Shown piece by piece: positions 68-43,100 of a stretch of 64,000 nt of DNA (position 1 is the first letter of the stretch; each line of letters begins with the position of its first letter). The DNA is from Ophelia neglecta (Eukaryota), in assembly GCA_965285935.1 (NCBI GenBank), contig OZ260661.1:135222001-135286000 (forward strand), read 5' to 3'. The position numbers were made by a program, and so were the translations under genes. The notes under the pieces were generated by a model. It searched no databases and was not told where the DNA came from. It saw nothing but the letters and a program-made list of their open reading frames with translations.

Positions 68-3000
68 CTACAATCGATATATTAACTGACCCGTACTGCT
101 ACTAGTACTGGCATCTAAGCTAGAATCCATTTCAGTGTCATCATAACCAGCATTGACACCAGTATTATCCGGCGGAGTTATTGAACTGCTTGTATCTGGT
201 GCGCCAAACATTACATTATCTTTAACAGATTGAAACATATTTGTGTCAGGAATATCACCATCATCATCCTGGACATCCCTATGTATGTTTTGAGAAATGG
301 GATTTTGATGATTGCCATAGTTGTCAGATATTGTCGCATTATTCTGCGCTGGTGCTGACTTCATTTTATCCGGTGAGCGCAGAATAAAATTATCATTAAC
401 AGTGTGAGGCACATTCATGTCTGAAACACTACCTCCATCTTTCTGGGAGTTGCTTTCGAAATCATCTACTTTTTGTGATATGGCACTTAGTTCGTCCTCA
501 ACGCTGCTAGGGGGCGCTGCATTAGTATCCATTTGTCCAGACTTAATCATTTCTGGGGCGGGGTTTATTACGTTAATGTCAATATCATCATCCTCGTCAC
601 CATAGGTCACCCCCTGTAGAATCTCTTCCTCGTCGTTTGCGATGTCACCGTAAGATGTATCTTCTTTGGATGTTACTTGGTTTTCCAGATCACTAGACTT
701 ATCATGCTCTGTGTAATCGTAGAGGTCACTCACCGACTCAGTTTTCAAAAACAAACTGTTAATAATATAAAAAGTCGATAAACAGCATTATTCATATAAA
801 TGTTGAATGGGCTATGCCCAGTTATCATGTTAATGGTTGAACGTTTGTATATAGAACTTAGCTTTCGACAAAGAAGTTGTAAGAATCATATTAAATAGCC
901 TTACCTTCCCTTCCCTAACAAATAAAATACGATCACAGAAATCACGACAATCAGTACGAGGCCAATGGACACTCCAATGTAAACATATTTAATGGTCTCC
1001 GGATCAATAACTGTAACGTGAACAATAAGATAAAACCACATTAAAGAAAAAACTTCAAAAATAAATAATACAAATCATCAAATTATTGATTAAGAACCTT
1101 TACATGCAAGGTATTTATATAAATTAAATTTTAACCATCATTACCTACCAGTAGCATTTCTGTAAGTGATATCGGATGAGGCGGTCGAAAACGATGATAT
1201 AACAGTCACTTCTGCATCGGATGCTGCGACAGAGACTGTTGGCTTTGACGGATTAAAGATGCCTGATGCTGGCTGATTGTCGTCTGCTAAAAAATATGTG
1301 ATAACAACAGTAATTATAATGTGTTCATTGTGTACAAATTGGCACGTACGAGCATTTTTACTAGAGTATGGTTCTAATAATTAAGTACCTTTAAATTGAT
1401 TAACTCCTGTCTTTTCTCATTTGTTGTATTTCGAAATATTGTATCAAGCGGTAAATTGTTTATAGAACTCTCCCTTGAGGAGGAATAAAAGTATACATAA
1501 CTTTCATCGTGTAATGTGTGGTCGGTTTGATTTTCAGGGTAAACTCGTGTTATTTCATTTAAATTCGTGCGATGTCGGCTGATTCTGCGCATACTTCGGT
1601 TAAATCGGATTATGATACAGGCTTATTCCGTGTGAAATTACCCGAATTTAACCTCGCCCTTCATACTTACCAGTTCTTTCACAAATATATCTGTACGTCT
1701 CGTTGGGACTAGCGTCAATCCATTTCCCGATGTACATGCGGACATATCCAGTATAATTCATGGGGTAAGTTCCCAACCAGTTTTGCCAGCTGTACAATTC
1801 CCCGCTTAACCAGGTCCAGTCAGCTCGTCTCTGAGTTAAAGGATGAGGCCTATTTTGAAGTGGAAACGCCTTCCTTAATCCGATCCAAAAGTGGTTTTTA
1901 TTGTATTTCCATGCGCATGTCCCGCTCTGTTGGCAGTCATTACTGTATTTCAAACGTAATACATTACTTCTCGGTCATGGCACATATTGTTATCTAATAT
2001 TTTGAAAAGCATGAGTAGATAATATTTCGGCTCAGAGTGTACATTTTGAATAATTTCTGGAAAAAAGAGATTTATATTTGAATTATTTTTGTTTCCCCCG
2101 AAATGCAAAACAAATGTATTGAGTATCTTACACTTTGTTCACAAGCATTATTGTTTCCAAAGGACTAGTGACCGACACAAGTTTAGCCCCTAGTCTGATA
2201 CAGTCAACATCGGCTTCATTGTATGTTTTTATTTCGTTTTGTCCAGAAACGTGGTAGCAGTGTCCACCGAAATGAGACCAATTTCCCCTAAAACTGCATT
2301 GAGCAGCAACACCTACAATGAAAATGCGTGATATTGGATAATGCTACAGAGGATGGGCGTGGTTTTGATAAACAGGGATTGTGAATAATAAAACATCAGT
2401 TAAACGAACTTGGTCTGCTTAAACACTAGCCGCATACAGGACGCGATTTATAGGCGGACACACCCTACAAACACTGTGTTACCCGGCGTATATATTGTGA
2501 CCTTACATACCACAACGCGGTGTTATTTTCTCAACCTGAAAACGTTTTACCTAATAGTATTCTCGTTGTAAAACAGGTAAAATTAAGATAATACAGTGAA
2601 ACCTGTGTTTGTTGTCACCGATGTAATAAGGTCACCTGTCCACTTAGGTCACTAGATATAAGCACAATCCCCATGTATGCCTGTGTTAACTGACCTGCAT
2701 ATTAAGGTCACTTTCTAATGTGTTCAGTTTTTTCCAGTCCCTTGACTGTTCTGATTAGACAGGTTTCACTGTACATATCTAAGGCTGTTGATTAAACGCG
2801 GAGGTGCGGAGGCTATGCGGAGGCGGAGGTCATGAGGATTTCTGAGTGGCATGAATAATCGTCAGCAAGGAAAGGGTTAGGACGGAGGGTTAATTTAAGG
2901 GTTAGGGGAAGGGTTAGGGACAGGTTTGATAGGTCTAGTGCTCTGTTCTAATTTCGGGATTTACCTCTGCAAGGCTCCGCGCCTCCGCTTTTAATCAAAA

Positions 3001-5528: not shown

Positions 5529-5772
5529 GGCATACTGGAAAAGCTGATACGAAAAACGAAGGAAATACGAGATACACAGATACGAAAAATTAAGATTGAG
5601 TTGGATTATGACAGGGTAAGGGGTAGGGTTAAGCTAGCAACCTAACTAAACCATAACTTACTTCATCCTTCACCCTAACCCTAACCTAGTCCATATGGCT
5701 ACGTTTTAAACACCTCGTATCTCGTATCTGCGTCTCGTATCTGCTATTTCGTGTCAACTTTTCCAGTATGCC
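5529..5772. mobile_element. Non-autonomous DNA transposon (MITE) with 9-bp TSD, Mutator/Merlin-like
   Basis: TIRs GGCATACTGGAAAAG / CTTTTCCAGTATGCC with subterminal GATACGA repeats; TSD CATCAACAT at 5520-5528 and 5773-5781; internal GGGTTA / TAACCC-like units. Confidence 0.88.
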
Positions 5773-8646
5773 CATCAACATTGTGGTTATTAGCAAACCT
5801 GATGGTAAAATATTCATAGCTGATTTAAATTTAAACGCACATGATATAATGCATAGGTGAACATGGGCTAAAAACAAATCAGATTGAACTGTACATCTAC
5901 ATTATACAAGTAGGGGTTCAAAATTATTGCATGGGATTACACTTTGTATTTAACAGTTAAAGCAAAAAAATGAAATTTGAGGTTTGTTCAGTGATTTATT
6001 TAATCTGAGTTTGGGTTAAAGTTAAGTAACTATCAACGATTTAGTATTATTTAAAAGGTAGGCTCTTAGTGGCTCCCATTTCATGGGTAACATAGTTCAC
6101 GCTATGTTATTGATTGTCATGGCATTGACCTAGCATTTCAGTTGTACGGCTTTTCAAGGTGTCTACCGACCGTGTCGTCATCAACATTACCTTTGTACAT
6201 CACTAGACACAACAAATACATAGACTGGTAACCTACATGGCATTGCTGTCCCTCCGTTAAGGACACTAATCTAGAGAGACCAGCTGGCAAAATAAACACG
6301 CCTTCTGCGTCACTCTTATAAAAGGAAATCTTAATTATGTAAACAGTTTTGTGAGCCAGTGAATATTTAACGATAGTTTATTAATCTAGGTGTAATACCT
6401 ATTTTACAAACCCCTTTCCTTCATATAGTTTGAACGTTCACCCTGTTGTATTAAAAGACATTCAGACGGTAAATCACCCCATGCCTAATTCCAGAAAATA
6501 AACAGTTAACATCTTTGCTAGCACAGAAAGCAAAAAGTCTCAAAAACAAAACTGCTGTGAAAAGTACATTGAGTAAGTACCAACTCCTTTTTGGACGCTT
6601 CACAAAGCTGTGCACCTACAATCATTTAAACAATTTTACTGTATTGCATTCAACTCCAAAGGATACTGGGTTTTCTAAGTAAACATATTAAAATCGGAAA
6701 CTATTAGTTAATATCACGTCCTAAACTTAGGCAAATCTGTCAACAACGACAGCAATTTTTCATCCTGGTCCGTGATTCATTTTATCCTGGTCACGTGATA
6801 AATTACATCCCACTCAACCTTTGCCGAAATCGCCGTCGGTTTACCCCATACCATAGTGTCATGTGAATGTCTTGTTTGAACTATTTCGGAAAAAAACTCT
6901 GCGTTTAGCTTAGTTTTAAGATATGATCCTGATGGATTTCATCTGTATACACTTGTGAGTTATAGCAATGACGTATATTTTTTTATTACCTGTGTGCAGA
7001 ATCCACAACATCATGCGTTGGCTGCTCAGCTTATAGTTGAACATGTAAAAAGACAACGATAACAGGTAATTGTTGTCCTATTCCATTTTAAGATGCAATG
7101 ATGTTTTAAGTCCTTTGCTATTCTTGTGTTTATAAAGACAAATCCACAATCATTAGAGTCACGTTTTTGATAGAGCTTCATACATTGTATAATCTCAAAG
7201 GGCATTTGTTAATCGTTGACCTACATTGATCACTGACTTGTTTTGTGCCCTATGCACCATGGAAAACGACTGAGCTTATTTCTTTTCTTATTTTTGCTAT
7301 TTTCGAAAAAGCTTAATTACAAGTAAGGAACTAACGGTTCCTGTTCGAGCGCCTTCTCTTGACTATTCGTAAAAAAATTGATGGGTAATTCTTAATTGTT
7401 GATATTACACCGTCTGCAGGTTACCCCCCATGTTTCTCCTACGCTGGGTTTTAGACGGTAAGCGTCCCCGGGCACAGCTTATATTAACATTAACCCATGA
7501 TAGGTCCCATCAGCCTTAAGCCATCAATATCATAAACTGAAATTGCTAACCAGAGGCGTGATCTGTGGAACAAATAGATACAGATTTTTCTGAAATAAAG
7601 TTATATTTTAGTCGCCCTATTTTACCGTTTGGGGGAGATGGCTGCACATAGTTATTCTATGAATTTACTTTCAACCATGTGAATACTTAAACCTTTATAC
7701 AAACAGTCATAAGGTCATATACCAGGACACGTCAGTGGAAATAAATGCCGATGTGTGTCAACCATGTACAGTCTACCATGACGCAGTGCCGTCAACTGTC
7801 ATGATATGCATATATGGCTGGTGATTTATTCATAACTGAATACATCTTAACGCAGGGTAGATAGGGAATAAGGCATACTAGCCAGTTGGCATTGTTGTTG
7901 CTATCCCCAAAGTTCATATGAGGGGCAAACATAGATGTGTGCGTGTGTAAAATCGGACTGCAATTGTTCAGCGTGGATATGCTGGTCCCTATATCATAGA
8001 ACCATCATATTTAGCTTCACACACCACATTAACAGTCAAGATTGGACCATAGTTTTACATTGTCTCGAACTATTCAGTTCGCTCCCGGATCTTACGAAAA
8101 AGCAACCACAAACCGTAATTTCATAGTTATGAAACCCACAATTCTGTTCAATAAGAACATAAAGGACTATTTGAAAGGATTGAAGATAGGAAAAAAGAAA
8201 CACTCAAAGGCCTGGTGCAACCCATATCGGTTTTATATTGATTTACTTAATTGTGGCTCACAGTGGCTTGCGAAATCAGTCAACTGCACAGTGGTATGTT
8301 GCCGAATACAAAAAAAATAAGTAAACTAAAGGGTCTATATTCAAGATGAACAAGGTAACTATCATAGTACTATCACAGCTCCAAACAGATTCAAAACTTA
8401 ACTGCTATTACAAAGCATGGTTTGGGGTAACCTAATGTAATTCATATGCAATCGTTTATCACACAGTAACATGAAACGTTTAATAATAAGATTAAGAAAT
8501 GTATATACGTATATATGATTTCATGATTGTTTTAGAAGCTAGAATCATATGTATATATATATGTATGCACACTCGCCTCTCACTTAGTGATATTCAGGTT
8601 ATGTGAAATTTTAATCCACATACAAAGTATTAGTTTTAGAATTGTG

Positions 8647-11367
8647 TTAACTTGGAAGAGTCCTGGCGTATGTGCTATTTTCCACCACAGTCAAATCCTC
8701 GTCGTTTTCAAAACTAGATCTTTTTTTGCGTTTATCTCTCTTTTGTGGCTGTGCATATAAAGCTGCAACTCCAAGATTGTTAGGTGTATTGTAAGTCATC
8801 GTCGATTTTTTTGAGCTCTTATCAATTTCCGCGTACATTGGGCTAACTTCATCAGAATTAGCATTGTGTCCCGGGGGAAGCTGTGTGTCGTAGGAGTACT
8901 GGTTTGCGGCATTAGCTTGTGAGTTTGCATTCTTATTGCTTTTGGGTGTGCCACGATTGTTGAGGTCTTCCCTTATGTTGTCGTACCTATCATTAGTCTG
9001 TGTGGCCTTGGCCCTGCAGGAAAACAAAAAGTCATTTGATATCACATTAGCCAAACCCGTAAAACATGCAACTATATTACGAGAAGAGATAAGCACTATT
9101 TATATATATTTCAATATTTTCAAATGACACGTACAATTGCACCGTTGACATTGTATATCACTTTGTAATATCACAAGCCTCATTTATAAATTCATTCGCT
9201 TCTGCCAGTCTACTCAAGAAAGATATCTTACCTTCGTTTCAGACACAGAACAAATACCACAGCAATAACTATGATTGTGACACCACCCAACGCCGCTCCG
9301 ATATATATATAAATACTGGTACCTGGAAAAGTAATATTATGATAACATTAAACAATGTATGTTTTTCAGTTTTCTCGAAATATTGTTGGTTGGTGGCACG
9401 TGTCAATCTGACAGCGACCTGTCTCCGAGTATAACATTGATATTAAGGCTAATTTTCTGAAACATTCATAGTTTTCACCTTGATCACTGTTGTCAGAGAT
9501 GTCAGTGGTTGCCTTGGTTGTAAGTTTAGTTTGAGATGTTGGAGCTGATGTATTATTGTATCCTGGTATATTTTTGGTAGAGCCATTCCTTTGCATAGTT
9601 GTCATCGCTGTTGTCGTCGCCTTGTTAGAGACATTGCCTTGTTGGGGTCTTATACTGGATGATATCGAAGTTTCTGCATCTGAGCAAAATGACTTTGCAT
9701 GAACATGGATCGGATATATTAATTTGCGTTGATCAAATTACCAACCGCCAATTTTTTTTCAATGAGTTTGTCTTAACAAAGGGGGCACGTCCTATAATAG
9801 AACCTCAACGAACTACTGAAGATACATTGACTAGAATCAATTTCATTCGATTTACCTTTTTTTTCACATAGAAATCTATAATTTTTTCCTGGATCACCTG
9901 TCCCAGCCCATTTCCCGTCGATGCGCATCCTTGCATATCTCTCATTGACATTGGGTTCCCCGTCACCCCAATTTTGCCATTCATACCAAGCATCACCTAA
10001 CCATTCCCATCCATCTCGCCTCATTGTTTCGTTGTAGATGTTTGTTGAGCTTGAAACGTCCTTTGTTAATCCAATCCAGAATTGGTGCATTCTATCCTCG
10101 GAATCGCAAACCTCCCCCGACATACACTTTATCCTGGTTAAAATGTAAGAATAGGTCATAGCACATAGCCAATACAATAATGCTATAATATAGTAAATCC
10201 GTAAACAATTGAAAAACACACCACCCACCACATTATAGGTATTATTGAGAAAATGTAATGTTAGAATGACAGTACTAGGAAACAAATAGCATAACATTCG
10301 TTTCATTTCAATACTGTAAACATTAAAATTACAAGAATCTGTCTTACAGGTTTTCGACGACGAATTCGTTTTGTTCCTTGTTTTCCACTGATACTAGATT
10401 GGCATGCAATCCTTCACATCTGCTAACCGCTTCTGTGAAATTCCGCAGAATGTCCTTTCCTGAGACATAATAACATCTTCCATCATACGGAAACCACTCG
10501 CCGTCAAATACACATTGATTTGCTACAACTGTAACACAGTAAACATAGCGGGTCATACTCGGGTAATAAACTACCGGGAAGAAATGTTTGAGAGGGCGGG
10601 CATCTTAAGAAATAAATGCTTAGCTTGAAAGAAACAGGAATCACTTATGACTAACACTATAAATAATGCAATGGAGCTATCACATTTTTGTATCAGAATA
10701 AATTATAGGCCCAACAAAAGCAACCCTTCTTCCCCCAGGTACTTTCCCCGTTGTCTTCTGACCGATCAAATACAATAATGTTCGATGTATAAACGTGTAG
10801 TTAGCCAAATTAGGTACGATGCCATGTTTTCAATTAAGCCGCTTGGGGTGTTGTCCTTGGGTTCTTTTTATGAATTTCAAGCCTGTTTTTAGGGTCTTAG
10901 AATATAGCATGGCCATTTCCGACGGAACCAATGACTTTCGGATTATAGGCGTTTTAAGCATCATGAAGTTCCATCTAAAATGCCATTTAACCTGACGAGA
11001 GCTATCCACGTTTGAAGAAGGAACACATTTGGCTCATGAGCCCAAGAGTACTATTCGAACAATCACTGAATCCGTGAGCCTTGGAAATATACATAAACAT
11101 AACCCACTTCACCGCATTTACTATTATCATTTTTACTTATATTCGTAGCCACAAAACAAACTTTACCCGAATACGCACACGCCTTCGACTCCCTTCTTAG
11201 TTCTTCTTTAATTGTAATAGTGAACCAACACGCTAGCTATGAAAATGGAAATATTTGTATGTTCACATTGTATTGAGAACACCGAGGTGTCTCAATATGT
11301 GTATACACATACCTGTACACAATGTGACTGCCACTAAAACACCAAGAAACAGGTCGGTAGGATACAT
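8647..11367 (-). CDS. G1: type I transmembrane C-type lectin-like receptor, tail type A (~390 aa)
   Basis: Exons 11313-11367 (MYPTDLFLGVLVAVTLCT), 10348-10528, 9856-10133 (FWIGL..EPN..FLCE), 9479-9679 (Thr-rich stalk), 9232-9322 (TM IYIYIGAALGGVTIIVIAVVFVLCL), 8647-9013 (tail with YDNI, YSY, YAEI, YNTP, YAQP, ENSTY). All GT-AG, 1173 nt, open. Confidence 0.9.
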
Positions 11368-11407: not shown

Positions 11408-12608
11408 TTTAATACTGAAATGAACACGGAAGTGGTCTTCTGGCGCTCTTACACCTTTACACGACACGACCACCGCCTGTTTGAGGCCAACACATTTGTT
11501 ATGGCTGGTAATGTATGTAGGTTGACAATGATGGCGACAGGGTCATTCATCACGGTTCGCTACGTATTCAGTTACCAACACCATGACTACTAAGTACGCT
11601 GCAATGGCAATATAATGGCACAGCGCACGGATATATATGCTTTGTAATCGGAGGAAGCGAATTAATATATTTATGAAATCACTAGAGTGATGTACTCTTT
11701 CAATTATATATGACTTATTTCAGCTCTTCACCTTGCAGTTGCGTCTTTAATTTCCGCTATGCTAGAAATTGTCCCCCTAGACGTAATTCGTAGAACCTTG
11801 TTATGCTTATAAGAAAACCGTTATAACAAAACGAGGACTGATGAACTTGTTTGACAGCTACGGACTGACACTTGCAATATCACAAGATAGGAAACGGTAT
11901 GCAAGATGCCTTATGTAAAGCTAGTATGTTTATAATAAAACGTATAACCATAAAATCACAGATTGACCTATTCAACCTAATGCTACAACCAGAAAGTGCT
12001 AGTTACGCTAAAATTATACTCAGTTACACAGGGATCTTTACAGCCCTCTTCGGTCTATTGTTTACTGAGACACTTCATATAATCTCTACATTTTATGAGG
12101 AGGTTATAATATCATAACCTCACTTGGGACATATATTATCTCTGTCCTACTATGACCAGTGACTCGTTTGTTTTGTGGTCTGACTCGCATCGTAGAAAAC
12201 TGTTGACTGCTTATTGCGAGGGTTAACATCACATAGTAATCAAGAAAATGTTCGCAATGACGTCCTTCTTAAATGGTCTGAATACGCCTGGCATTTAAAC
12301 AATGCAGTGGCTATATGTTGCTGGAGAAATAATTTGTAAATATTTGTATCATTATCACCACCTACCCACAAAGTTTCTGTATTTTTTATAACGTTATTGC
12401 ATCGCGAACACCAGTAAGAAGGTTAAGAAACTTTAGTAACCCCTGGGGTATTGATTATTGTTATGTATAGATGTTGTGACCTTGGAAAATAAAGGCTTTA
12501 GTGAAGACACAGCTGCAGTTCGTTTCCTATGTACAAGCTGCTGATGACATATATTTAACTGTTATATACATGTACATATATAGGTGCTCTGAACAGGCAT
12601 ATTGCGGT

Positions 12609-13023
12609 TTATTTTGTAGCTATAAGCAGTGAATTATTGCATGATATATTCAGTTTGCCCTCTCGTACTTCCGTATATGGACCATCAGTCTGCCACCCGA
12701 AGTCTCGTATATCCTCGTATGGACCATCAGTCTGCCACCCGAAGTCTCGTATATCCTTGTAGGGACCATCAGTCTGTAAACCCGAAGTCTCGTATATCCT
12801 CGTATGGACAATCAGTCTGCCACCCGAAGTCTCGTTTATCCTCGTATGGACCATCAGTCCGCGGCCCAGCTTTTCGTTTGCCTTCGCTAGGAGTGTTTAT
12901 ATGGTCAGCTGGTGGCTGAAGGTGGCCTACATACTCATACACAGTAGCAATATATGCTTCATGTCTTGAATATGCTGCTTTGTAATATCCATGACCAGTG
13001 GGGGCGGGGGTGTTCGATCGTTC
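12609..13023 (-). pseudogene. Orphan, 5'-truncated paralog of the Tyr-rich tail exon (frameshifted copy)
   Basis: ERSNTPAPTGHGYY..YEYVGHLQP..DGPYED repeats, homologous to G2-G7 tail; 1-bp insertion in the 43-bp unit 12763-12805; 5' end fused to LINE. Confidence 0.8.
12679..12859. repeat. 42-bp minisatellite, 4 units plus partial
   Basis: Unit GGACCATCAGTCTGCCACCCGAAGTCTCGTATATCCTCGTAT starting at 12679, 12721, 12763, 12806, partial at 12848. Confidence 0.95.
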
Positions 13024-14760
13024 TCGCCAAAGGAACAGAGACGGTTTTCTCGCGGAAGTCTAGCCCACCTGACAGTCTCCAGTAGCAACGAATGCGAGCC
13101 TGTACGCATCCTGGTGACCGCGACGCGAGCAATATTTAGGATACGCGTTTTGATGAGGAATCAGACATCACACGGTTGCGGATCAGGTTATATAATCAGT
13201 CTGTGTATCAAGAGTCTGAAAGTACATGTCTGACTTGGCCACGCGTGCAGCCTGAAGTGTCAAACATAACGGGGAATCGCGAAAATTGACCCGCTATGAA
13301 ACTTTCCCCGAAAAGAGAGCCTGCTTTTCCCGAACAATAGCATCCACATCAAAAACTCCCACCTCCACGAGCACAGAGTGCGTGGTGGTCTGTAGGCGTA
13401 CGCACATTATAGCCTTGAACGTTTCGATATATGCCTGTTTCAGGCAGGCCACTGAGGAAGTCCACCAACTCTCACATCCATAGAGTATGGCAGAAAAGAG
13501 TGCACACTGCCACACGCTCCTTGATGGCATAAGGAGCGTCTCTGTGTGTATTGAGAAAACACAGTAGTCGAGCACATGTCCCTGTTTGGTCGCTATACGA
13601 TCCTGTACCTGTGGAGAGATCCCGCGAATAGAGATCAAGTTGCCAAGATAGCTGTACTGCTCTGTTCGTTCCATGGCCCTCCCAGCAACAACAAACGGAC
13701 GACAGTCACGTGAATTTGATACCATAAACAATGACTTTTTATGGTTGATCCGTAATCCATCGCGTCCCACAAAGTCGCCACCAAAGATCTTCCGTTTACG
13801 CCTCAACGCAGCGCGTGAAGTGGCTAGTTTGGCCGTGTCGTCCACCAGTAGGTGAGCGTGAAGCCAGGCTAGCCAGCCATCATCTGGGAGGGATCGAGGG
13901 ACAACCGCAAGAGGATTGATGAAGAATACAAACAGGATGACAGACAGTGGAGCCCCCTGACGAAGCGCGAGAGTCGCATGAATGGTCGTGTTCCCAATGA
14001 GACTAGCCGTATTTGAAAGTAATGCACACAGTGCCGCCAAGAAACGACCACCACAGCCTTTCACAGCCAGCCAATTTAGTATTATTTGTCTTTTTACGGT
14101 GTCATATGCATTTTCAAAGTCATTAAATGCTATGTACAATGTTTCCTTTGTTCTCCGAGCACGGTCGATAATGAGACGTAAAGTGAGCAGTTGTTTAGGA
14201 CATTCTCGGCCAGGCTGGCCGCCAGCCTGTTCCTGGCAAGAACCCCACCAGCGAGGGAATCGACCTATTAAATAGAGGAGTACACCTCGGCAAGAGAGGG
14301 GATTTCACTGATACCCCGATAGTTCCCAGGAAGATATCGGTCCCCCTTTTTGAATAACATAGTCAACCTCGCCACTAACCATGCGTACATGGTTTTCCCC
14401 CACCAAATCAGATATCATGTTTTATAAGACACCGAATTTGTTGCCATCCGGTATTGACTAGACAGCTGTCAACTCCTCCCTCAATGCCAGAAAGGTACGA
14501 GTCTAGTGTCTTGAATCACTGTGTGCAGGGCCCGCTTCAAGTCATCGGCCCTGGGCTTAGTAATAGCTGACCGTGTCAATGTAAATGTGAATATCTCAGC
14601 TAAGTCCACGTTGACAGTTGGTCTGCCAGACCCAGACTGTCTCATTATGAAATATTCACAGGTGATCGAGTGTACAGGGATAAGGGACCATGGACGCCAG
14701 TCAAGCGTAAAATACAAGCAAACCCAATCAAATATGTCCAAAATTAATCCAGTTCCCAGA
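13024..14760 (-). mobile_element. Decayed, internally deleted non-LTR retrotransposon (LINE; CR1/L2/RTE-X-like), copy a
   Basis: RT motifs FNDFENAYD, LRQGAPLS..LF, LVDD, YSYLG; C-terminal SHSLLLETVRW..PRENRLC; stops and frameshifts; 5' limit approximate. Confidence 0.85.
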
Positions 14761-16506: not shown

Positions 16507-19500
16507 TTAATTAGTCCGTGATACATTCAGTGGATTGTATGTGACATTCGGTGAGAGGGCCTCGTATTCTCTTTCAGTTACTTTTTCCACAGAAGCCCCA
16601 ACAGTCCGCCGCCCGCCTTCTCCTATGTCTTCATATGTACCATGAGTCGGCCGCCCAACTTCTTGTATGTCTTCATATGGACCATCAGTCTGCCGTCCGA
16701 TTTCTTGTATATCCTCGTATGGACCATCTACACATGGACTGTTTAAAGTATCGGCTCGTGGCTGAATGTAGCCTACTTCCTCATATTGAGAAGTAATATA
16801 TTGTCCCTGTCTTGAATTTGCTACGTTGTAATAATCATGGCCAGTGGGGGCGGGGGTGTTTGATCGTACGTCCTCGTGAGCTGCTGCTTCATTGTAATAT
16901 GTGTGTTCTGTGTAAGTCTTCTGTTGGTCTGCTGTGTGTTGCTTCCTGAAAATACATTTATTGATACTTATTATTATGAATATATACATTTGAAATCTCA
17001 TATGATACTTTGGTGTTCTGTTGAGTTTTCACAATTATCACAACTACACAAACAAAAAATCAATATAACCCCGATTGCTGATCCGATTAATAACTTTATA
17101 ATGGTATCACCGACATCACAAATAATATAAATATCAGCTTATTGTCAATTGCATTTTACATTTAGCCTTCAGGATTATCATAGCAGCACATCTTCCATTT
17201 TGTACATCTTCCTGCACGCAGTTTGTTTCCGGATCATTCCCTCCGCCCAACTTTCTCACCGCAACCTATCCGCTCCCAACCACTGTTTCTCACCCCGCCA
17301 CCTGTCTACTCGCTCTGGACGAGAAAGTTTGCAGCCCCTTCAGTCTCTTTCACCCTTTAAGTGTCAGTAATTGGTTCTTTCTTTATTCAGCCAGCCTGCT
17401 CGTCAAGCGCTTTGCCCATCCCTCATCTTCCTGCACAACACACCTACCCTCTCCCCCAAGCATACTGACTCGACCCCTTGGTTATCAGGTCGGGCATACT
17501 GTTGCCCCCTAAAATGTGATAAAAAACACTCTAGCCATGTTTTCCATTTTAATAAAAATATACTCAAAACGGTAAAGCATAAAATATATAACAAGAATAG
17601 ATACCCGGAAAGCTTAAGCAATGGTTTACCAACGATTTAACTATGAAAGGCCCATTTGACAGTCAACATATTTTGCATCTTACTAGCTAAGATTACTAAT
17701 CCGCTTCTCATAAGGACATATCTTACCTTCGTTTCTGGCAGACAACATACAGAACAACAGCAATAAAAGGGATTATCACACCACCCAGCACTGGTCCGAT
17801 ATATAAATAAATACTGGTACCTGGAAAAGTTATAAAATGATACTTTTAGACAAAGTATCTTTGTTCTAGTTTCCACGAAATATTATTGGTCTGGTCTAGG
17901 TGAAGACCAACTAACACTCGGGCCTCTTTGAAGGCTGCCGAAGTTGAACTTAACCTCTTCCATATGTGAAATGTATGTAGGGCATGCTTGTATAATTAAG
18001 GCTAAGCTTTCTCAGCTATACAAACAGCAGATGAACATTTGAGCCACATACCTACTCTGAGGAGTGTAATTTCTGACCTTAAAACATCTGCAATTCCTAA
18101 GTGAACATATGAAGAACATTTGACTGTCAATCAAAATATATCGGACAATGGTGGATTGAGGGATAAGCAAAGAAAGCAGGCTGATCAGATAAAGGAGTTG
18201 GAGGGTCTCTGTGGAAACTTGGAGTCAAAGGTTCTGGAGCAGGAACAATACTTTAGGATAAACAATTTTGAAATTCCGAATATCAAAGATGCGATGTTAA
18301 ACCAAACTACTCTAAAAGATCTCCTTCAATTTGCAGAGAATCATAAACCCAAAGAATAGAATTTTACTTTACATTAAAAAAATCTGTTTTCGATTCGTGT
18401 TTCCAAATTTACAACGACCTGTCTTCATATGCTGCAGTCACATTTAGGAAAATTTTCTGATATACATAGTTTTTACCTTGTTCACTGCTATCAGAGATTT
18501 TAGTGGTTGCCTTGATTGTTGGTTTAGTTTGAGATGTTGGAGTTGATGTATTATTGTATCCTGGTATATTTTTTGTAGAGCCATTCCTAGTAGTCATTGC
18601 TGCTGTCGTCGCCTTTTTAGAGCCATTGCCTTGTTGGGGTCTTATACTGGTTAATATCGCAGCTTCTGCATCTGAGTGAAATGATTTTGCATGAACACGG
18701 ATCGGATACATTAATTTGTGTTGTTCAAATTACCAACCGCCTAAAGTTGCTATTTAAATGAAGCAATGGGTGCACATCCTACAATTGAACCTCAATTTAC
18801 TACTGAAGATACAATGCCTGGAATCTTAATTTAAGTGTATCTACCTTTTCTTTCACATAAAAACCTATAATTATTTCCTAGATCATCTGTCCCAGCCCAT
18901 TTCCCGTCTATGAGCATCTTTGCATATCGCTCATTCACATTGGGTTCCCCGTCACACCAATTTTGCCATTCATACCACGCACCACCAAACCACTCCCATC
19001 TATCTCGCCTCATTGTTACGTTGTCGCTGTTCGCTGAGTTTGAAACGTCTTTTGTTAATCCAATCCAGAATTGGTTCGTTTCTTTCACGGGATCGCAATC
19101 CTGCCCCGACATGCACTTTATCCTGGTTAAAAGGTAACAATTAGTCATAATATTTAACTAATATAATACTTCAATAATAAAATAAGTCTCAAGTGTTCAA
19201 ACATTTGAAAAACACAACATCCACCACATGATAGGCATTATTGAGAAAATGTTTTATTAGGATGACAGTACTAGGTCACACATAGCATGCCATTCGTTTC
19301 ATTTCAATGCTGTAAGCATTAAAATACAAGAATCTTTCTTACAGCTTTTCGAAAACGAATTCGTTTTGTTCTTTGTTTTCTACTGATACTATAGAGGCAT
19401 GCAATCGTTCACATCTGCTAACTGCTTCTGTGTAATTTCGTAGAATGTTCTTTCCTGAGACATAATAACACCTCCCATCATAAGGATACCACGAGCCGTC

Positions 19501-34257: not shown

Positions 34258-35662
34258 ATTGAGCCGAGATTGGGATATCCTACGCCACAGCGGCCATTTT
34301 AATACTGAAATGAACACGGAAGTGGTCTTCTGGCGCTCTTACACCTTTACACGACACAACCACCGCCTGTTTGAGGCCAACACATGTGTTATGGCTGGTA
34401 ATGTATGTCGGTTGACAATGATGGCGACAGGGTGATTGATCACGGTCCGCTACGTATTCAGTTACCAATACCATGACTACTAAGTACGCTGCAATAGCAA
34501 TATAATGGCACAGCTCACGGGCATATATGCTTTGTAAACGTGGGAAGCGAATTAATATATTTATGAAATCACTAAATATTAAAATCCAGTAAACTTAGCG
34601 TTGTACTCTATACCTGCAGTAGATCTTAACTTTTAATTTACTTAAATGCATTTCTTCACTACAACGTAATAAACCCTAGAGTGATGTACTCTATCAATTA
34701 TATATGACTTACTTCAGCTCTTCACCTTGCAGTTGCGTCTTTAATTTCCGCTATACTAGAAATTGTCCCCCTAGACGTAATTCGTAGAACATGGTTATGG
34801 TAATAAGAAAACCGTTACAACAAAACTAGGACTGCTGAATTTGTTTGACAGCTACGGACTGACACCTAGCAATATCACAAGATTGGAAACGGTATGCATG
34901 ATGCCTTATGTAAAGTTGTTATGTTTATAATAAAGTGTATAACCATAAAATCACAGATTGACCTATTCAACGCAATGCTACAACCAGACAGTGCTAGTTA
35001 CGCTAAAATTATACTCAGTTACACGGGGATCTTTACAGCCCTCTTCGGTCTATTGTTTACTGAGACACTTCATCTAATCTCTACATTTTATGAGGGGGTT
35101 ATAATATCATATCCTCACTTGGGACATATATTATCTCTGTCCTACTATGGCCAGTCTCGTTTGTTTTGTGGTCTGACTAGCATCGTAGAAAACTGTTGAC
35201 TGCTTATTGCGAGGGTTAACATCACATAGTAATCAAGAAAATGTTCGCAATGACATCCTTCTTTATTCTATGATAGTTGTGCTGAACGCGTATTTTAACT
35301 TGCAATGTACGTAAACTGGTGTTGTGGCCGAAATGGTCTGAATACGCCTGGCATTTAAACAATGCAGTGGCTATATGTTGCTGGAGAAATAATTTGTAAA
35401 TATTTGTATCATTATCACCACCTACCCACAAAGTTTCTGCATTTTTTATAACGTTATTGCAACGCGAACTCAAGTAAGAAGGTTAAGAAACTTTAGTAAC
35501 CCCTGGGGTGTTGATGGTTGTTATGTATAGATGCTGTGACTTTAGAAAATAAAGGCTTTAGTGAAGACACAGCTGCAGTTCGTTTCCTATGTCCAAGCTG
35601 CTAATGTCATATATTTAACTGTTATATACATATAAAGGTGCTCTGAACAGGCATATTGCGGT

Positions 35663-36076
35663 TTATTTTGTAGCTATAAACAGTGAATTATTGCATGATA
35701 TATTCAGTTTGCCCTCTCGTACTTCCGTATATGGACCATCAGTCTGCCACCCGAAGTCTCGTATATCCTCGTAAGGACCATCAGTCTGCCACCCGAAGTC
35801 TCGTATATCCTCGTATGGACCATCAGTCTGCCACCCGAAGTCTCGTATATCCTCGTATGGACCATCAGTCTGCCACCCGAAGTCTCGTATATCCTCGTAT
35901 GGACCATCAGTCCGCGGCCCAGCTTCTCGTTTGCCTTCGCTAGGAGTGTTTATATGGTCAGCTGGTGGCTGAAGGTGGCCTACATACTCATACACAGTAG
36001 CAATATATGCTTCTTGTCTTAAATATGCTACGTTGTAATAACCATGACCAGTGGGGGCGGGGGTGTTCGATCGTTC
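35663..36076 (-). pseudogene. Orphan, 5'-truncated paralog of the Tyr-rich tail exon (frame still open; 4x YEDI + YTEV)
   Basis: ERSNTPAPTGHGYYNVAYLRQEAYIATVYEYVGHLQP..(TDGPYEDIRDFGWQ)x4 TDGPYTEV..; AATAAA overlapping the stop; native splice acceptor replaced by LINE. Confidence 0.8.
35733..35912. repeat. 42-bp coding-type minisatellite, 4 units plus partial
   Basis: Units start at 35733, 35775, 35817, 35859, partial at 35901; identical except one synonymous change. Confidence 0.95.
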
Positions 36077-38510
36077 TCGCCACAGGAACAGAGACGGTTT
36101 TCTCGCGGAAGTCTAACCCACCTGACAGTCTCCAGTAGCAACGAATGCGAGCCTGTACGCATCCTGGTGAACGCGACGCGAGCAATTTTTAGGATACGCG
36201 TTTTGATGAGGAATCAGACATCACACGGTTGCGGATCAGGTTATATAATCAGTCTATGTATCAAGAGTCTGAAAATACATGTTTGACTTGGCCACGCGTG
36301 CAGCCTGAAGTGTCAAACATAACGGGGAATCGCAAAAATTGACCCGCTATGAAACTTTCCTCCAAAAGAGAGCCTGCATTTCCCGAACAATAACATCCAC
36401 ATCAGGAACTCCCAACTCCACGAGCACACAGTGCGTGGTGGTCTGTGGGCGTACGCATATTATAGCCTTGAGAGTTGAGATATATGCCTGTTTCAAGGCA
36501 GGCCACTGAGGAAGTCCACCAACTCTCACATCCATAGAGTATGGCAGAAAAGAGTGCACACTGCCACACGCGCTCCTTGATGGCATAAGGAGCGTCTCTG
36601 TTTGTATTGAGAAAACACAGTAGTCGAGCGCATGTCCCTGTTTGGTCGCTATATGATCCTGTACCTGTGGGGAGATCACGCGAAGAGAGATCAAGTTGCC
36701 AAGATAGCAGTACTGCTCTGTCTGTTGGAGGGCCCTCCCAGCAACGACAAACGGACAACAGTCACGTGAATATGCTACCAATGACTTTTTATGGTTGATC
36801 CGTAATCCATCGCGTCCCACAAAGTCGCCACCAAAGATCTTCCGTTTACGCCTCAACGCAGCGCGTGAAGTGGCTAGTATGGCCGTCTCGTCCACCAGTA
36901 GGTGAGCTTGAAGCCAGGCTAGCCAGCCATAATCTGGGAGGGATCTAAGGTCAACCGCAAGAGGATTGATGAATGGCAGGATGACAGACAGTGGAGCCCC
37001 CTGACGAAGCGCGAGAGTCGCATGAATGGTCGTGTTCCCATTAGGACTAGCCGTATTTGAAAGTAATGCACACAGTGCCGCCAAGAAACGACCACCACTG
37101 CCTTTCACAGCCAGCCAATTTAGCAGAAATTATCTGTTTATGTTGACACATGCCTTTTGGAAGTCAATAAATGTTATGTACAATGTTTCCTTTGTTGATA
37201 ACGGTCGATAATGAGACGTAAAGTAGGCAGTAGTTTAAGACATTCTCGGCCAGGCTGCCCTCCATCCTTTTTCTGGCAAGGACACCATCAGCGCAAGAGT
37301 CCACCTTGGCAAGAGAGGGGATTACACTGAGGCCCCGATAGTTCCCAGGAAGAGATTTGTCCCCCTTATTGAATAACATAGTCAACCTCGTCAGCGAACA
37401 TGGGCCAGGATAACCGCCTGAGAACACCATGTACATAATCATTAGTAAAATCCACTCCTCTGGCAACGACCTGAGTGGAATAGGTGGATTGTCGTCCACG
37501 CCAGAAGCGCGGTCCATGAGAGAGTTAATTGTAGTTTTCACCAAATCAAACTAATATCATCATCCAGGACAGGGATATAAGTAGCAGAGCCTGGACACCG
37601 TAGCCAAGAATCCAAACATGGCGGACGCAGCACCGTTTCGAAGCGCTATGCTTCTGGAAGTCCAAGTCGGATGGACCATCTGAATAATGGCCAAACTTTG
37701 ATTGTCGTGTTCGGTCGATTGAATCCCAGACCCTTTTCTCATCCCGCTTGTGTAGCACCCAACTGCCTGGTATGCCTTTGAGATTTCTGGCGGCACCAAA
37801 CAGGTTGTTACAGCCGTTCGGAGAGTAGAATTTAACCAACATGGGTCGCGGCCGGGTGGGGACCACTATCAGCTTCGTTAGCTGGCCGGACCTTACCCAC
37901 TCTCCTCACTTCCGAAACCCCACTTGGCGTCGGGTTGGTGCCGAGGGCCTATGCAAACAATGAGTGAGAGGCTCCTTTTCTGAAAGATGATAACATTGGA
38001 TCCCCTCGCCTCTGAATCAAGGTATTTCTGTTGTGCAGATACAGTTGCCATTAGGTCAGTCTGCTGGGCCGACATGTACGATACTGTGCTCGTTCAAGTC
38101 TCCAGCTCCACAATTCGTGCCTTCAAGGAGTTATTTTTCAGAAAAATCAGAGATCATGTTAAACAAGACACCGAATTTGTTGCCATCCGGTACTGACTAG
38201 AAAGCTGTCAGGCTAAGTCCTCCCTCAATGCCAGACAGGGGTGAGTCTTTCTTGTCCTGAATCACTGTGTTCAGGGCACGCTTCAGGTCATCGGCCCTGG
38301 GCTTGGTAAAAACGGATCGTGTCAATGTAAATATCTCATAAGCCGAGTCAGTTGACACTTGGTCTGCCTGACCCAGACTGACTCATTATGAAAACATACA
38401 CAGGTAAACGAATGTACAGAGATAATGGACTATGGGCGCCAGTCAAGCGTAACATACAAGCAAACCCAATCAAATATGTCCAAAACTTATTCAGTTCCAA
38501 GATTTTTACA
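36077..38510 (-). mobile_element. Decayed LINE, copy d (longest; ORF1 and RT remnants)
   Basis: ORF1-like EARGSNVIIF and RPRPMLVKF; RT N-terminal ASGVD..P, KGDKSLPGNYRGLS; RQGAPLS; YCYLG; no recognisable endonuclease region. Confidence 0.85.
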
Positions 38511-40198: not shown

Positions 40199-43100
40199 TT
40201 AATTAGTCCGTGATACATTCAGTGGAGTGTATGTGACATTCGGTGAGAGGGCCTCGTATTCTCTTTCAGTTACTTTTTCCACAGAAGCCCCAACAGTCTG
40301 CCGCCCGACTTCTCCGATGTCTTCATATGTTACTTGAGTCGGCCGCCCAACTTCTTGTATGTCCTCATATGGACCATCGGTCTGCCGCCCGATTTCTTGT
40401 ATATCCTCGTATGGACCATCTTCACTTGGACTGTTTAAAGTATCGGCTCGTGGCTGAATGTAGCCTACTTCCTCATACTGAGAAGTAATATATTGCCCTG
40501 GCCTCGAATTTTCTACGTTGTAATAATCATGACCAGTGGGGGCGGGGGTGTTCGATCGTTCGTCCTCGTGAGCTGCTGCTTCATTATAATATGTGTGTTC
40601 CGTGTAGGTCTTCTGTTTGTCTGCTATCTGTTGCTTCCTAAAATTACATTTATTGGTACTTATTATTATGCATATATACATTTGAAATCTCATATAATAC
40701 TTTGATGTTCAGTTCAGTTTTTCACAATTATCACAACTACACAAACAAACAATCAATATAACCACGATGGCTAATCGGATGTTAATATATTTAATGGATT
40801 CACCGACATCACAAAAATCATTCCCTCTGCCCCACTTTCTCACCGCGACCTATCCGCTCCCAATCCATGTTTCTCACCCCGCCACCTGTCTATTCGCTCT
40901 GGACGAGAAAGTTTGCAGCACCGTCGGTCTCTTTCACCCTTTAAGTTTCAGTAATTTGCTCTTTCTTTATTCAGCCAGCCTGCTCGTCAAGCGCTTTGCC
41001 CATCCCTCATCTTCCCGCACAACACACCTACCCTCTCCCCCAGCATTCTGACTCGACCCCTTGGTTATCAGGCCGGGCATACTGACCACTCCCAGGCACC
41101 GGGATACTGTTGCCCCCCCCCCCCCCCAAATGTGATAAAAAACACTCTGGCCATGTTTTCCATTTTAATAAAAATATACTCAAAACGGTAAAGCATTAAA
41201 TATATAACAAGAATAGATACCCGGAAAGCTTAAGCAATGGTTTACCAACGATTAAACGGTGAAAACCCCATTTGAAAGTCAACATATTTGGCATCTTACT
41301 AGCTAAGATTACTAGTCCGCTTCTCAAAAGGACATATCTTACCTACGTTTCTTGCAGACAACATACAGAACAACAACAATAAAGAGGATTATCACACCAC
41401 CCAGCACTGGTCCGATATATAAATAAATACTGGTACCTGGGAAAGATATAAAATGATACTATTAGACAAAGTATTTTTGTTCTAGTTTCCACGAAATATT
41501 ATTGGTCTGGTCAAGGTGAAGACCAACTAACACTCGGGCCTCTTTGAAGGCTGCCGAAGTTGAACTTAACCTCTTCCATATGTGGAATGTATGTAGGGCA
41601 TGCTTGTACAATTAAGGCTAAGCTTTCTCAGCAATACAAACAGCAGATGAACATTTGAGCCACATACCTACTCTGAGGACTGTAGTTTCTGACCTTAAAA
41701 CCTCTGCAATTCCTAAGTGAACATATGAAGAACATTTGACTGTCAATCAAAATATATCGGACAATGGTGGATTGAGGGATAAGCAAAGAAAGCAGGCTGA
41801 TCAGATAAAGGAGTTGGAGGGTCTCTGTGGAAACTTGCAATCAAAGGTTCTGGAGCAGGAACAATACTTTAGGATAAACAATTTTGAAATTCCTAATATT
41901 AAAGATGCGAGGTTTAACGAAGCTACTCTAAAAGATCTCCTTCGATTTGTAGATAATCATAAACCCAAAGAATAGAATTTTACTTTACATTAAAAAAATC
42001 TGTTTTCGATTCGTATTTCCAAATTTACAACGACCTGTCTTCATATGCTGCACTCACATTTAGGTGAATTTTCTGATATACATAGTTTTTACCTTGATCA
42101 CTGTTGTCAGAGGTGTCAGTGGTTGCCTTGGTTGTTAGTTTAGTTTGAGATGTTGGAATTGATGTTTTGGTTGATCCATTTCTTTGTATTGTTGTCATCG
42201 CTGTTGTCGTCGCCTTGTTAGAGACATTACCTTGTTGGGGTCTTATACTGGATGATATCGAAGTTTCTGCATCTAAGCAAAGTGACTTTGCATGAACATG
42301 GATCGGTAATATTAATTTGCGTTGATCAAATAACCAACCGCCAATTTCTTTTAAATGAGTTTGTCTCAACAAAGGGGGCACGTCTTATAATAGAACATCA
42401 ACCAACTGCTGAAGATACATTGACTAGAATCAATTTCAGTCGATCTACCTTTTCTTTCGCATAAAAATCTATAAGTATTTCCTGGATAATGTGTCCCAGC
42501 CCATTTCCCGTCGATGATCATCCTTGCATATCCCTCATTGACATTGGGTTCCTCGTTTCCCCAATTTTGCCATACATACCAAGCACCACCGAACCACTCC
42601 CATCCATCTCGCCTCATTGTTACGTTCTCGCTGTTTGCTAAGTTTGAAACGTCCTTTGTTAATCCAATCCAGAATTGGTTCATTTCACTCCCGGGATCGC
42701 AACCCTGCCCCGACATGCACTTTGTCCTTGTTAAAAGGAAACAATAAGTCATACTACTAACTAATATAATACTACATAACAAAATAAGTCTCCACACATT
42801 TGAAAAGCCCAACGCCCACCACATGATAGGCATTATTGTGAAAATATATTGGTAGGATGACAGTACTAGGGAACACATAGCATGACATTAGTTTCATTTC
42901 AATGCTGTAAGCATTAAAATACAAGAATCTTTCTTACATGTTTTCGAAGACGAATTTGTTTTGTTCCTCGTTTTCTAATGATACTAGAGAGGCATGCATT
43001 CCTTCACATCTGCTAACCGCTTCTGTGAAAGTTCGTAGAACCATCTTTCCTGAGACATGATAACACCTCCCATCATAAGGATACCACTGGCCCTCAAAAT

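What the first reader, a model, noticed from the sequence alone, without database searches (positions are those of the whole stretch)
8647..9322. Tail swapping: closely related ectodomain and TM, non-homologous cytoplasmic exon (paired-receptor logic)
Seen: G1 exons 1-5 are close paralogs of G2-G7 (CTLD-b IKCMSGEVCDSEDRMHQFWIGL is nearly that of G3/G4/G6), but its last exon (YDNI, PMYAEI, ALYAQP, ENSTY, basic KRDKRKKR) shows no visible similarity to tail B, and G0 has a third tail. Every TM exon ends in phase 2, so tails are interchangeable cassettes. Established: paired receptors (KIR, Ly49, LILR, SIRP) couple similar ectodomains to different outputs; YxxP is an Abl substrate / Crk-Nck SH2 motif. 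Inference: similar ligand class, different signal.
Basis: partly seen in the sequence, partly recalled or inferred. Interest (0 to 1): 0.78.

Follow-up and report, generated by a model that had tools for sequence, protein, structure and literature searches.

The report
Lectin receptor with a different tail
One gene at the end of a tandem array of invertebrate sugar-binding receptors has the same outer part as its eleven neighbours but an unrelated inner tail. That tail is the older, family-wide type, probably for uptake, and the neighbours carry the newer one. This is a familiar way for immune-type receptor families to evolve, and no RNA data yet show the gene is used.

Summary
G1 (minus strand, six open exons, 390 codons) shares its promoter, lectin, stalk and membrane exons with G2-G12. 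DNA similarity stops about 10 bp past the membrane-exon donor, near 9220. Its last exon (8647-9013, tail A) has no detectable similarity to tail B or to the G0 tail.

The interpretation needs three corrections.
- Tail A is not an orphan. It aligns significantly with the last exons of other C-type-lectin receptor genes on this chromosome, through four collinear blocks ending in an acidic run plus a hydrophobic-x-N-x-x-Y motif. Tail B exists only in this array. Tail A is therefore most likely ancestral, and the replacement happened in the founder of G2-G12.
- G1 is a mosaic. Its membrane-exon segment is an old outgroup to G2-G12, while everything upstream of about 9395 is made of variants shared with them. 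This fits gene conversion or unequal crossover.
- Tail A has no ITIM or ITAM. It looks like an uptake tail, whereas tail B has ITAM-like YEDI pairs. This suggests "uptake versus signalling", not classic inhibitory/activating pairing.

No RNA run exists, so splicing is inferred. The scan has noted similar tail exchange in other lectin-receptor families of this genome.

The parts
8647..9013 (-). G1 exon 6: cytoplasmic tail A (first base completes an Arg codon, then 121 codons and a stop). Blocks: YDN(I); QLPP; MYAEID+basic; LYAQP; basic run; acidic run + VENSTY near the C-terminus.
   Evidence: acceptor, frame; homology to other receptor tails; motifs; single copy in the genome
9014..9231 (-). 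G1 intron 5 (218 bp). Only the first ~10 bases after the donor (gtaagatat, 9222-9231) are shared with G2-G12. The breakpoint of homology is near 9220.
9232..9322 (-). G1 exon 5: membrane-spanning exon, 91 nt (one codon shorter than in G2-G12), ending with two bases of a codon.
9223..9394 (-). Old 3' module shared with G2-G12 (membrane exon plus the last ~70 bp of intron 4). It is 75-80% identical to every tail-B copy, whereas those copies are 85-100% identical to each other. G1 branch 0.22; 17% private substitutions.
9395..11367 (-). Exchanged 5' module: the stalk exon (9479-9679), the second lectin exon (9856-10133), the first lectin exon (10348-10528), the signal-peptide exon (11313-11367) and their introns. 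It is built almost wholly of variants shared with tail-B genes: 2.5% private substitutions over the 9395-9700 stretch measured, 0-7% per 60-bp window further up to 10640, and a G1 branch of 0.045-0.067.
11682..14374 (-). G1 5' flank, 92-95% identical to the 5' flank of G4 (34676-37393). It includes an orphan tail-B-like exon (12609-12854) and reverse-transcriptase fragments.
16507..16945 (-). G2 tail B exon, shown for comparison. The same splice phase applies (ttcag|G). It has 13 tyrosines and two overlapping ITAM-like YEDI-x10-YEDI pairs. This tail type occurs only in this array.
68..754 (-). G0 tail C exon (228 codons, acidic). It is unique in the genome. Its membrane exon at about 913-987 ends in the same phase.

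Best explanation
G1 is an intact type-I membrane C-type-lectin receptor gene built from two modules of different age.

3' module. This covers the end of intron 4, the membrane exon, intron 5 and the tail A exon. It descends from the ancestral receptor lineage, whose tail ends in an acidic run plus a hydrophobic-x-N-x-x-Y motif. That lineage is sister to the founder of the eleven tail-B genes.

Origin of tail B. In that founder, a rearrangement with its breakpoint about 10 bp downstream of the membrane-exon donor replaced the old intron 5 and tail by a new intron and the tail B exon. The new gene then amplified to G2-G12.

5' module. Later, the 5' part of G1 (flank, signal peptide, both lectin exons, stalk; boundary near 9395) kept exchanging sequence with the tail-B genes by gene conversion or unequal crossover. 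G1 therefore displays the same kind of sugar-binding head as its neighbours.

Inferred function. The same ligand class is coupled to two outputs:
- Tail A has VENSTY after an acidic cluster, YAEI, YAQP and YDN. It most likely recruits PTB or AP-2 type adaptors for uptake or engulfment, plus Crk/Abl/Grb2-type SH2 proteins.
- Tail B has three YEDI motifs at ITAM-like spacing. It most likely recruits tandem-SH2 kinases.

What is shown and what is inferred. Shown: the anatomy, the breakpoints, the homologies and the mosaic pattern. Inferred: the direction of the swap, the splicing and all signalling.
For: - Breakpoint: G1 matches the other units only from 9220 upward. There is no DNA similarity beyond it, even with 7-base words.
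- The tails are unrelated: A vs B z 0.45, A vs C z -0.6. Profiles score at shuffle level.
- Tail A belongs to a family. SW z is 8-11 against four other receptor tails. A profile of six other tails scores it 32.1 bits, E 1e-7, against a maximum of 16.6 in 5000 shuffles. The blocks are collinear, with N112 and Y115 invariant (A2). There are 26 genome hits, all on contig C1. The four checked lie next to lectin-domain exons.
- One such gene (U2) lies just upstream of the tail-B array, so the array is flanked by A-type tails on both sides.
- Tail B and its intron occur only in the array: 11 copies plus 2 orphan exons.
- The region 7600-9225 is single copy.
- Mosaic: in the membrane segment G1 is the outgroup (identity 75-80% vs 85-100% among the others; branch 0.22). 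In the lectin and stalk segments G1 is nested (branch 0.045-0.067; sister of G6 at 95/97). Private substitutions are 29/172 vs 7/282, Fisher p 8e-8.
- The G1 membrane exon is nearest to those of G2-G12, not to those of U1, U2 or G0.
- The six-exon frame is intact. A second haplotype carries only in-frame indels in the two exons: 12 bp at 8937 and +3 at 9251. In the intron it has 3- and 4-bp indels.
- Literature: the FENTLY internalisation motif of the mannose receptor (PMC8551360), and paired receptors kept alike by regional gene conversion (PMC2110893).
Against: - No RNA data exist, so use of the tail A acceptor is unproven.
- Polarity rests on parsimony. The lectin-exon tree is poorly resolved: monophyly of the tail-B genes is not rejected (p-AU 0.42). 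The possibly nearest outgroup, U1, has a fourth tail type on a long branch.
- The origin of tail B was not found.
- The nesting of G1 in the ectodomain trees is unrooted. It could partly reflect rate differences.
- The motif readings are pattern matches only. VENSTY lacks the proline of NPxY.
- The DNA runs that confirm the junction come from one sample, probably the one that was assembled.
Confidence: 0.6

Rival explanations
1. One reading: G1 began as an ordinary tail-B gene and recently captured a foreign tail exon. The capture would be by exon shuffling from a donor locus, or by a deletion that fused it to the 3' end of a neighbour.
For: G1 is the only one of 12 close paralogs with this tail. 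Its ectodomain is nested among the tail-B genes. It sits at the edge of the array, where a fusion with a neighbour could occur.
Against: There is no donor. Tail A and its flanks are single copy, and its nearest relatives are only 22-28% identical. The membrane exon next to tail A is itself old: 20-25% diverged from all tail-B copies and outgroup to them. So the junction between the B-like sequence and the old sequence lies in intron 4 (about 9395), not at the tail. A hybrid made by crossover in intron 4 between a tail-B gene and an old A-tailed neighbour remains possible. It differs from the best explanation only in being one event rather than repeated conversion.
Confidence: 0.2
2. The tail A reading frame is a relic or a chance frame. 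G1 would end elsewhere, be truncated or secreted, or be a pseudogene.
For: There is no RNA evidence at all. The tail exon is a single copy and cannot be checked for selection by paralog comparison.
Against: A 122-codon frame in 37% G+C DNA is on the right strand. It sits 218 bp after the membrane exon, behind a strong acceptor in the matching phase. It keeps all four family blocks and both invariant residues, although the module is old. Indels in the second haplotype are in frame within the exons. All five upstream exons are intact. ATTAAA lies 34 and 165 nt after the stop.
Confidence: 0.12
3. Tails A and B are the same exon diverged beyond recognition, as happens with fast-evolving disordered sequence that keeps only short motifs.
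For: Both are tyrosine-rich and disordered-looking. Both have a membrane-proximal Y-x-N and a late N-x-x-Y (NSTY vs NVTY).
Against: The adjacent membrane exon and intron 4 keep about 78% DNA identity, yet similarity falls to shuffle level within 10 bp inside intron 5. A-type tails stay alignable between genes whose lectin exons are only 35-49% identical. No score exceeds shuffles.
Confidence: 0.05
4. Assembly artefact: the G1 head and the tail A region are wrongly joined.
For: Tandem arrays are prone to mis-assembly.
Against: Independent short contigs bridge 9009-9305 without a mismatch in two runs. A 1.8-kb contig of the other haplotype spans 7450-9305. All runs are from the same sample, however.
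Confidence: 0.03

Closest known systems
Vertebrate paired receptors kept alike by regional gene conversion (dog CEACAM1/CEACAM28, human SIGLEC5/SIGLEC14, KIR, Ly49, LILR, SIRP)
   Same: Neighbouring paralogs lie in a head-to-tail array. The 5' flank, leader and ligand-binding exons are exchanged and kept similar, while the 3' end encodes a different cytoplasmic tail. The boundaries lie in introns (PMC2110893; here).
   Different: Tail A has no ITIM, and neither partner has a charged membrane residue. Both tails carry their own tyrosine motifs. The head is a C-type lectin domain of a type-I protein in an invertebrate. There is one A-tailed gene against eleven B-tailed genes. No expression or ligand data exist.
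Endocytic lectin and scavenger receptors with a hydrophobic-x-N-x-x-Y tail signal (mannose receptor FENTLY; LDL receptor FDNPVY; CED-1/Draper NPxY, the last two from general knowledge)
   Same: These are type-I membrane proteins. The tail carries a hydrophobic residue at -5, N at -3 and Y at 0. In this family that motif is the most conserved feature (VENSTY, VDNSMY, VDNVTY, FDNDNY, VDNVIY). The mannose receptor motif drives clathrin-dependent uptake (PMC8551360).
   Different: There is no proline at -2. The motif sits at the very C-terminus after an acidic run. There is no sequence homology to those receptors, and no uptake assay has been done.
Oyster membrane C-type lectin CgCLec-TM1
   Same: It is an invertebrate membrane-anchored C-type lectin that signals inward, to ERK/GSK3beta and IL-17 (cited in PMC9316650).
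   Different: Relatedness to G1 was not tested. No alternative-tail paralogs are described in the text read.
F-type-lectin receptor clusters of this same genome with phosphatase or ITAM-type tails
   Same: They show the same theme in the same genome: near-identical lectin heads joined to alternative cytoplasmic ends.
   Different: The head fold, the tails and the chromosome pieces all differ. Those notes were not checked here.

Membership tests
Paired activating/inhibitory immune receptors | Neighbouring paralogs with closely similar ligand-binding ectodomains | tested here: met
   G1 vs G2-G12: 84-90% DNA identity across the lectin and stalk segments, and 73-84% protein identity in the second lectin exon
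Paired activating/inhibitory immune receptors | One partner carries an ITIM ([ILVS]xYxx[ILV]) tail | tested here: not met
   Tail A has no match. The only two matches (SQYEEV, VTYNPL) are in tail B, which also has the ITAM-like pairs
Paired activating/inhibitory immune receptors | The other partner is activating: a short tail with a charged membrane residue for an ITAM adaptor, or its own ITAM | tested here: inconclusive
   Tail B has YEDI-x10-YEDI twice, a spacing wider than the classic 6-8. No charged residue is seen in the translated G1 membrane span. Function is untested
Paired activating/inhibitory immune receptors | Shared ligand and opposite signalling outcome in the same cells | not testable with these tools
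   No RNA runs. No biochemical data
Paired activating/inhibitory immune receptors | Ectodomain similarity maintained by gene conversion or unequal crossover with intronic boundaries | tested here: met
   G1 is the outgroup in the membrane segment but nested upstream of about 9395. Private substitutions are 17% vs 2.5%, p 8e-8
A-type tail family of C-type-lectin receptors of this genome (defined here) | Last exon after a membrane exon in the same phase, with collinear blocks QxPP / MYxE(I/V)D / YAxP / acidic run + TxV(E/D)NxxY | tested here: met
   Profile without tail A: 32.1 bits, 0 of 5000 shuffles. SW z 8-11. Alignment A2. Same phase in the upstream gene U2
A-type tail family of C-type-lectin receptors of this genome (defined here) | Tail B, tail C (G0) and tail D (U1) also belong | tested here: not met
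   Tail B scores 1-3 bits (558 of 5000 shuffles as good) and G0 scores -10.9. The U1 tail gives z -0.8 to 1.9 against the A-type tails. There are no relics of an A-type tail in any tail-B unit
Tyrosine-based internalisation signal of the FxNPxY / FENTLY kind | Cytoplasmic hydrophobic(-5)-x-N(-3)-x-x-Y(0) | tested here: met
   VENSTY in tail A. N and Y are the only invariant columns across 7 tails
Tyrosine-based internalisation signal of the FxNPxY / FENTLY kind | Drives adaptor binding and uptake | not testable with these tools
   Needs a chimeric-receptor uptake assay
C-type lectin domain (Pfam PF00059) | Profile match above the curated cut-off | tested here: inconclusive
Searched exon by exon only: 19.4 bits (E 0.0018) and 13.9 bits (E 0.093), against a cut-off of 22.6.

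The most novel reading that the evidence does not exclude
G1 and the eleven tail-B genes form a working receptor pair invented independently in an invertebrate. Ongoing gene conversion keeps one glycan-binding head on two outputs: an ancestral uptake tail (acidic run + hydrophobic-x-N-x-x-Y) and a newly born ITAM-like signalling tail. The birth of the signalling tail can be mapped to a breakpoint 10 bp inside one intron.
Probability: 0.25. Interest if true: 0.6.

Novelty: new member of a known kind. Interest (0 to 1): 0.36.

Why it matters
The locus shows, at base-pair resolution, how a receptor family acquires a new signalling output. Of the 12 close paralogs in the array (G1-G12), only G1 keeps the old tail. 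The rest carry a tail found nowhere else in the genome, and recombination keeps the heads of both types alike. If both types are expressed in the same cells, this would be an invertebrate counterpart of vertebrate paired receptors. It would also give a simple system for asking what a tail swap does to the response to one ligand. The conserved C-terminal acidic + N-x-x-Y block defines a previously unnamed tail family of lectin receptors that can be tested directly for uptake. Without RNA or functional data it remains a tidy but fairly ordinary case of birth-and-death evolution in an immune-type gene array.

Tried and rejected
- RNA evidence: the look-up of sequencing runs returned only three DNA-like runs of one sample. 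Read laying could therefore check only the physical junction.
- Donor loci: a six-frame search with tail A found only distant relatives. Tail B was found only in the array and the G0 tail only at its own place.
- The first DNA search of the G1 3' region was swamped by a 245-bp high-copy repeat at 5529-5775. Repeated without the repeat, 7600-9225 is unique. Tail-B intron 5 is array-specific.
- Relics: no decayed A-type tail lies downstream of any tail-B gene, and no tail-B relic lies near G1.
- External relatives of the A-type tail: a profile search of 1.8 billion representatives gave only three weak hits, P0001-P0003. The one contig looked up is 1 kb, without context.
- Pfam found nothing in any tail.
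- A possible link between the U1 tail and tail B through shared YYN motifs was not significant.
- A rooted lectin-exon protein tree could not resolve whether G1 is inside or sister to the tail-B genes.
- A global alignment of whole units misaligned the membrane exon and was replaced by local alignments.
It was redone from references.
- The organism was not identified.
Full report
**What is there.** The window is G000:C1:135222001-135286000 of a 762-Mb invertebrate genome. On the minus strand it holds a head-to-tail array of genes for type-I membrane receptors with a C-type-lectin head.

I read G1 exon by exon:
- signal peptide, 11313-11367
- first lectin exon, 10348-10528
- second lectin exon, 9856-10133
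- stalk, 9479-9679
- membrane exon, 9232-9322
- last exon, 8647-9013

All have GT/AG boundaries and matching codon phases. The lengths sum to 1173 nt, that is 390 codons and a stop. The joined protein was not built or searched. Exon-wise Pfam hits to Lectin_C are weak.

G1 matches the other array units at 76-95% DNA identity from 9220 upward to beyond 12500. Nothing between 6000 and 9220 matches anything else in the window. In the alignment of seven copies, the membrane exon and its gtaagatat donor are shared, and similarity ends about 10 bp into intron 5 (A1). A 7-base-word comparison of 7000-9221 with the 3' parts of five tail-B genes and of the two upstream genes (U1, U2) stays at shuffle level.

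At protein level the three tails are mutually unrelated:

| Comparison | SW score | z | Shuffles as good |
|---|---|---|---|
| Tail A vs tail B | 35 | 0.45 | 298/1000 |
| Tail A vs G0 tail | 35 | -0.6 | 748/1000 |
| Tail B vs G0 tail | 32 | -0.7 | 765/1000 |

Profiles in both directions also give scores no better than shuffles. Every membrane exon read (G0, G1, G2-G7, G12 and the two upstream genes) ends with two bases of a codon. Every tail read (G0; G1; G2, G3, G5, G7; U2) starts with one.

DNA contigs bridge 9009-9305 exactly in two runs, and a 1.8-kb contig of a second haplotype spans 7450-9305. The junction is therefore physical, although all three runs come from one sample.

**Tail A is not an orphan.** A six-frame search of the whole genome finds tail A once. 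It also finds weak matches that are all last-exon-like open frames. Four of these lie next to lectin-domain exons of the same family:
- a gene just upstream of the array (U2; tail at window-equivalent 126930-127259)
- a gene at 134.92 Mb
- a gene at 134.60 Mb
- a multi-copy array at 144.67-144.83 Mb

The similarity to tail A is significant. SW z is 8-11, with 0 of 1000 shuffles as good. A profile built from six of these tails without tail A scores it 32.1 bits (E 1e-7), against a maximum of 16.6 in 5000 shuffles.

The alignment shows four collinear blocks (A2):
- QLPP
- MYAEID followed by basic residues
- LYAxP
- an acidic run followed by T-x-V-(E/D)-N-x-x-Y at the C-terminus

N112 and Y115 are the only invariant columns. 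With tail A included, the profile finds 26 places in the genome, all on contig C1 between 133.8 and 144.8 Mb. In 1.8 billion external representatives it finds only three weak hits.

By contrast, tail B and its intron occur only in this array: 11 full copies plus two orphan exons. The G0 tail is unique. The gene between the array and U2 (U1) has a fourth, again unalignable tail. No decayed A-type tail lies in any tail-B unit.

**G1 is a mosaic.**
- *Membrane segment.* Over the 172-bp segment 9223-9394 (membrane exon plus the end of intron 4), the eleven tail-B copies are 85-100% identical to each other. G1 is 75-80% identical to all of them. In the tree it is a 0.22-long outgroup branch.
- *Stalk and lectin segments.* Here G1 is as close to the others (84-90%) as they are to each other. 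Its terminal branch is 0.045-0.067, and it groups with G6 (95/97).
- *Private substitutions.* Positions where G1 differs from every tail-B copy make up 29 of 172 in the membrane segment but 7 of 282 just upstream (Fisher p 8e-8). The switch lies near 9395, where most tail-B copies carry about 516 extra bases in intron 4.
- *5' flank.* The G1 5' flank is 92-95% identical to that of G4.
- *Nearest relatives.* The membrane exon of G1 is still nearer to those of G2-G12 than to those of U1, U2 or G0.

**Most likely history.** The 3' module of G1 (membrane exon, intron 5, tail A) is old and is sister to the 3' module of the tail-B founder. Several more distant paralog lineages have A-type tails, including genes on both sides of the tail-B array. 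Parsimony therefore puts the replacement on the tail-B branch. A rearrangement about 10 bp past the membrane-exon donor gave the founder a new intron and a new last exon, and that gene amplified. Later, the 5' module of G1 exchanged sequence with its neighbours by conversion or unequal crossover. A single crossover in intron 4 between a tail-B gene and an old A-tailed neighbour would give the same picture.

This polarity is an inference. The lectin-exon protein tree is unresolved: monophyly of the tail-B genes is not rejected (p-AU 0.42), and U1 sits on a long branch. The source of tail B was not found.

**Likely function (inferred).**
- *Tail A* (7 tyrosines) has no ITIM and no ITAM-like pair. 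It has VENSTY, which fits hydrophobic-x-N-x-x-Y, after an acidic cluster. It also has YDNI and YAEI (Y-x-x-hydrophobic), YDN (Y-x-N), and YNTP and YAQP (Y-x-x-P).
- *The conserved terminal block* has the form of the FENTLY signal that mediates clathrin-dependent uptake of the mannose receptor (PMC8551360). From general knowledge, it also has the form of the FDNPVY/NPxY signals read by PTB adaptors.
- *Tail B* (13 tyrosines) has two overlapping YEDI-x10-YEDI pairs and two ITIM-pattern matches, but no N-x-x-Y signal of that form.

The best reading is "same kind of head, uptake tail versus signalling tail". This is not the classic inhibitory/activating pair.

**Comparison with what is known.** The pattern of a shared, recombining 5' part with different 3' ends matches paired receptors such as CEACAM1/CEACAM28, where a conversion tract covering the flank, leader and ligand-binding exon ends in an intron (PMC2110893). 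Membrane C-type lectins that signal are known in oysters (PMC9316650). Earlier notes of this scan describe analogous tail exchange in F-type-lectin receptor clusters elsewhere in this genome, so the theme is recurrent here.

**Limits.**
- No RNA run holds the stretch, so splicing of 9232 to 9013 is inferred. The inference rests on a strong acceptor, matching phase, an intact 122-codon frame, retention of all family blocks in an old single-copy exon, in-frame indels in the second haplotype (12 bp at 8937, +3 at 9251, against 3- and 4-bp indels in the intron), and ATTAAA 34 and 165 nt after the stop.
- The organism was not identified.

**Verdict.** This is a clean, well-delimited example of a known evolutionary mechanism in a new family. 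The added points are that G1 keeps the ancestral tail and that the array's own tail is the novelty.

Noticed in passing
window 5529-5775: A ~245-bp element is present in many copies at 96-98% identity on at least ten contigs, some as adjacent inverted pairs. It is a young high-copy MITE- or SINE-like repeat.
   Followed up: no
window 12609-12854 and 35663-35995 (-): Orphan tail-B-like exons (about 61-64% identical to tail B, with repeated DGPYEDIRDFGW units) lie just downstream of reverse-transcriptase fragments, in the 5' flanks of G1 and G4. They show that tail exons exist apart from receptor heads.
   Followed up: partly
window 51763-52162 (G6 intron 4): G6 carries a second partial copy of the stalk exon (51763-52014). 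It also has a 51-bp piece (52112-52162) that is 88% identical to the G1-type end of intron 4. Its real membrane exon lies 2 kb further on.
   Followed up: partly
window 17896-18410 and the same place in the other tail-B copies read: About 516 extra bases sit in intron 4 of most tail-B genes and are absent from G1. A plus-strand open frame (18120-18359) inside them recurs at 41736-41975. This is probably an old insertion marking the tail-B lineage.
   Followed up: no
G000:C1:135335078-135337517 (window-equivalent 113078-115517, loci L028/L029): The gene between the tail-B array and U2 (here U1) has a lectin head, a membrane exon in the same phase, and a fourth 76-residue tail with two YYN motifs. 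That tail aligns with none of the others. A LINE-like pair of long open frames lies just downstream.
   Followed up: partly
window 7450-9305: A second haplotype in the DNA contigs differs at about 3% of positions (58 substitutions and 24 gap letters over 1842 bp). It includes an in-frame 12-bp deletion in the tail A exon and a 3-bp insertion in the membrane exon.
   Followed up: no
G000:C1:144675366-144827366: There is a second tandem array of about 18 A-type tail exons, presumably lectin receptors, though only one locus (L021) was checked for lectin exons. Six of the tail exons carry in-frame stop codons, so they are likely dead copies.
   Followed up: no
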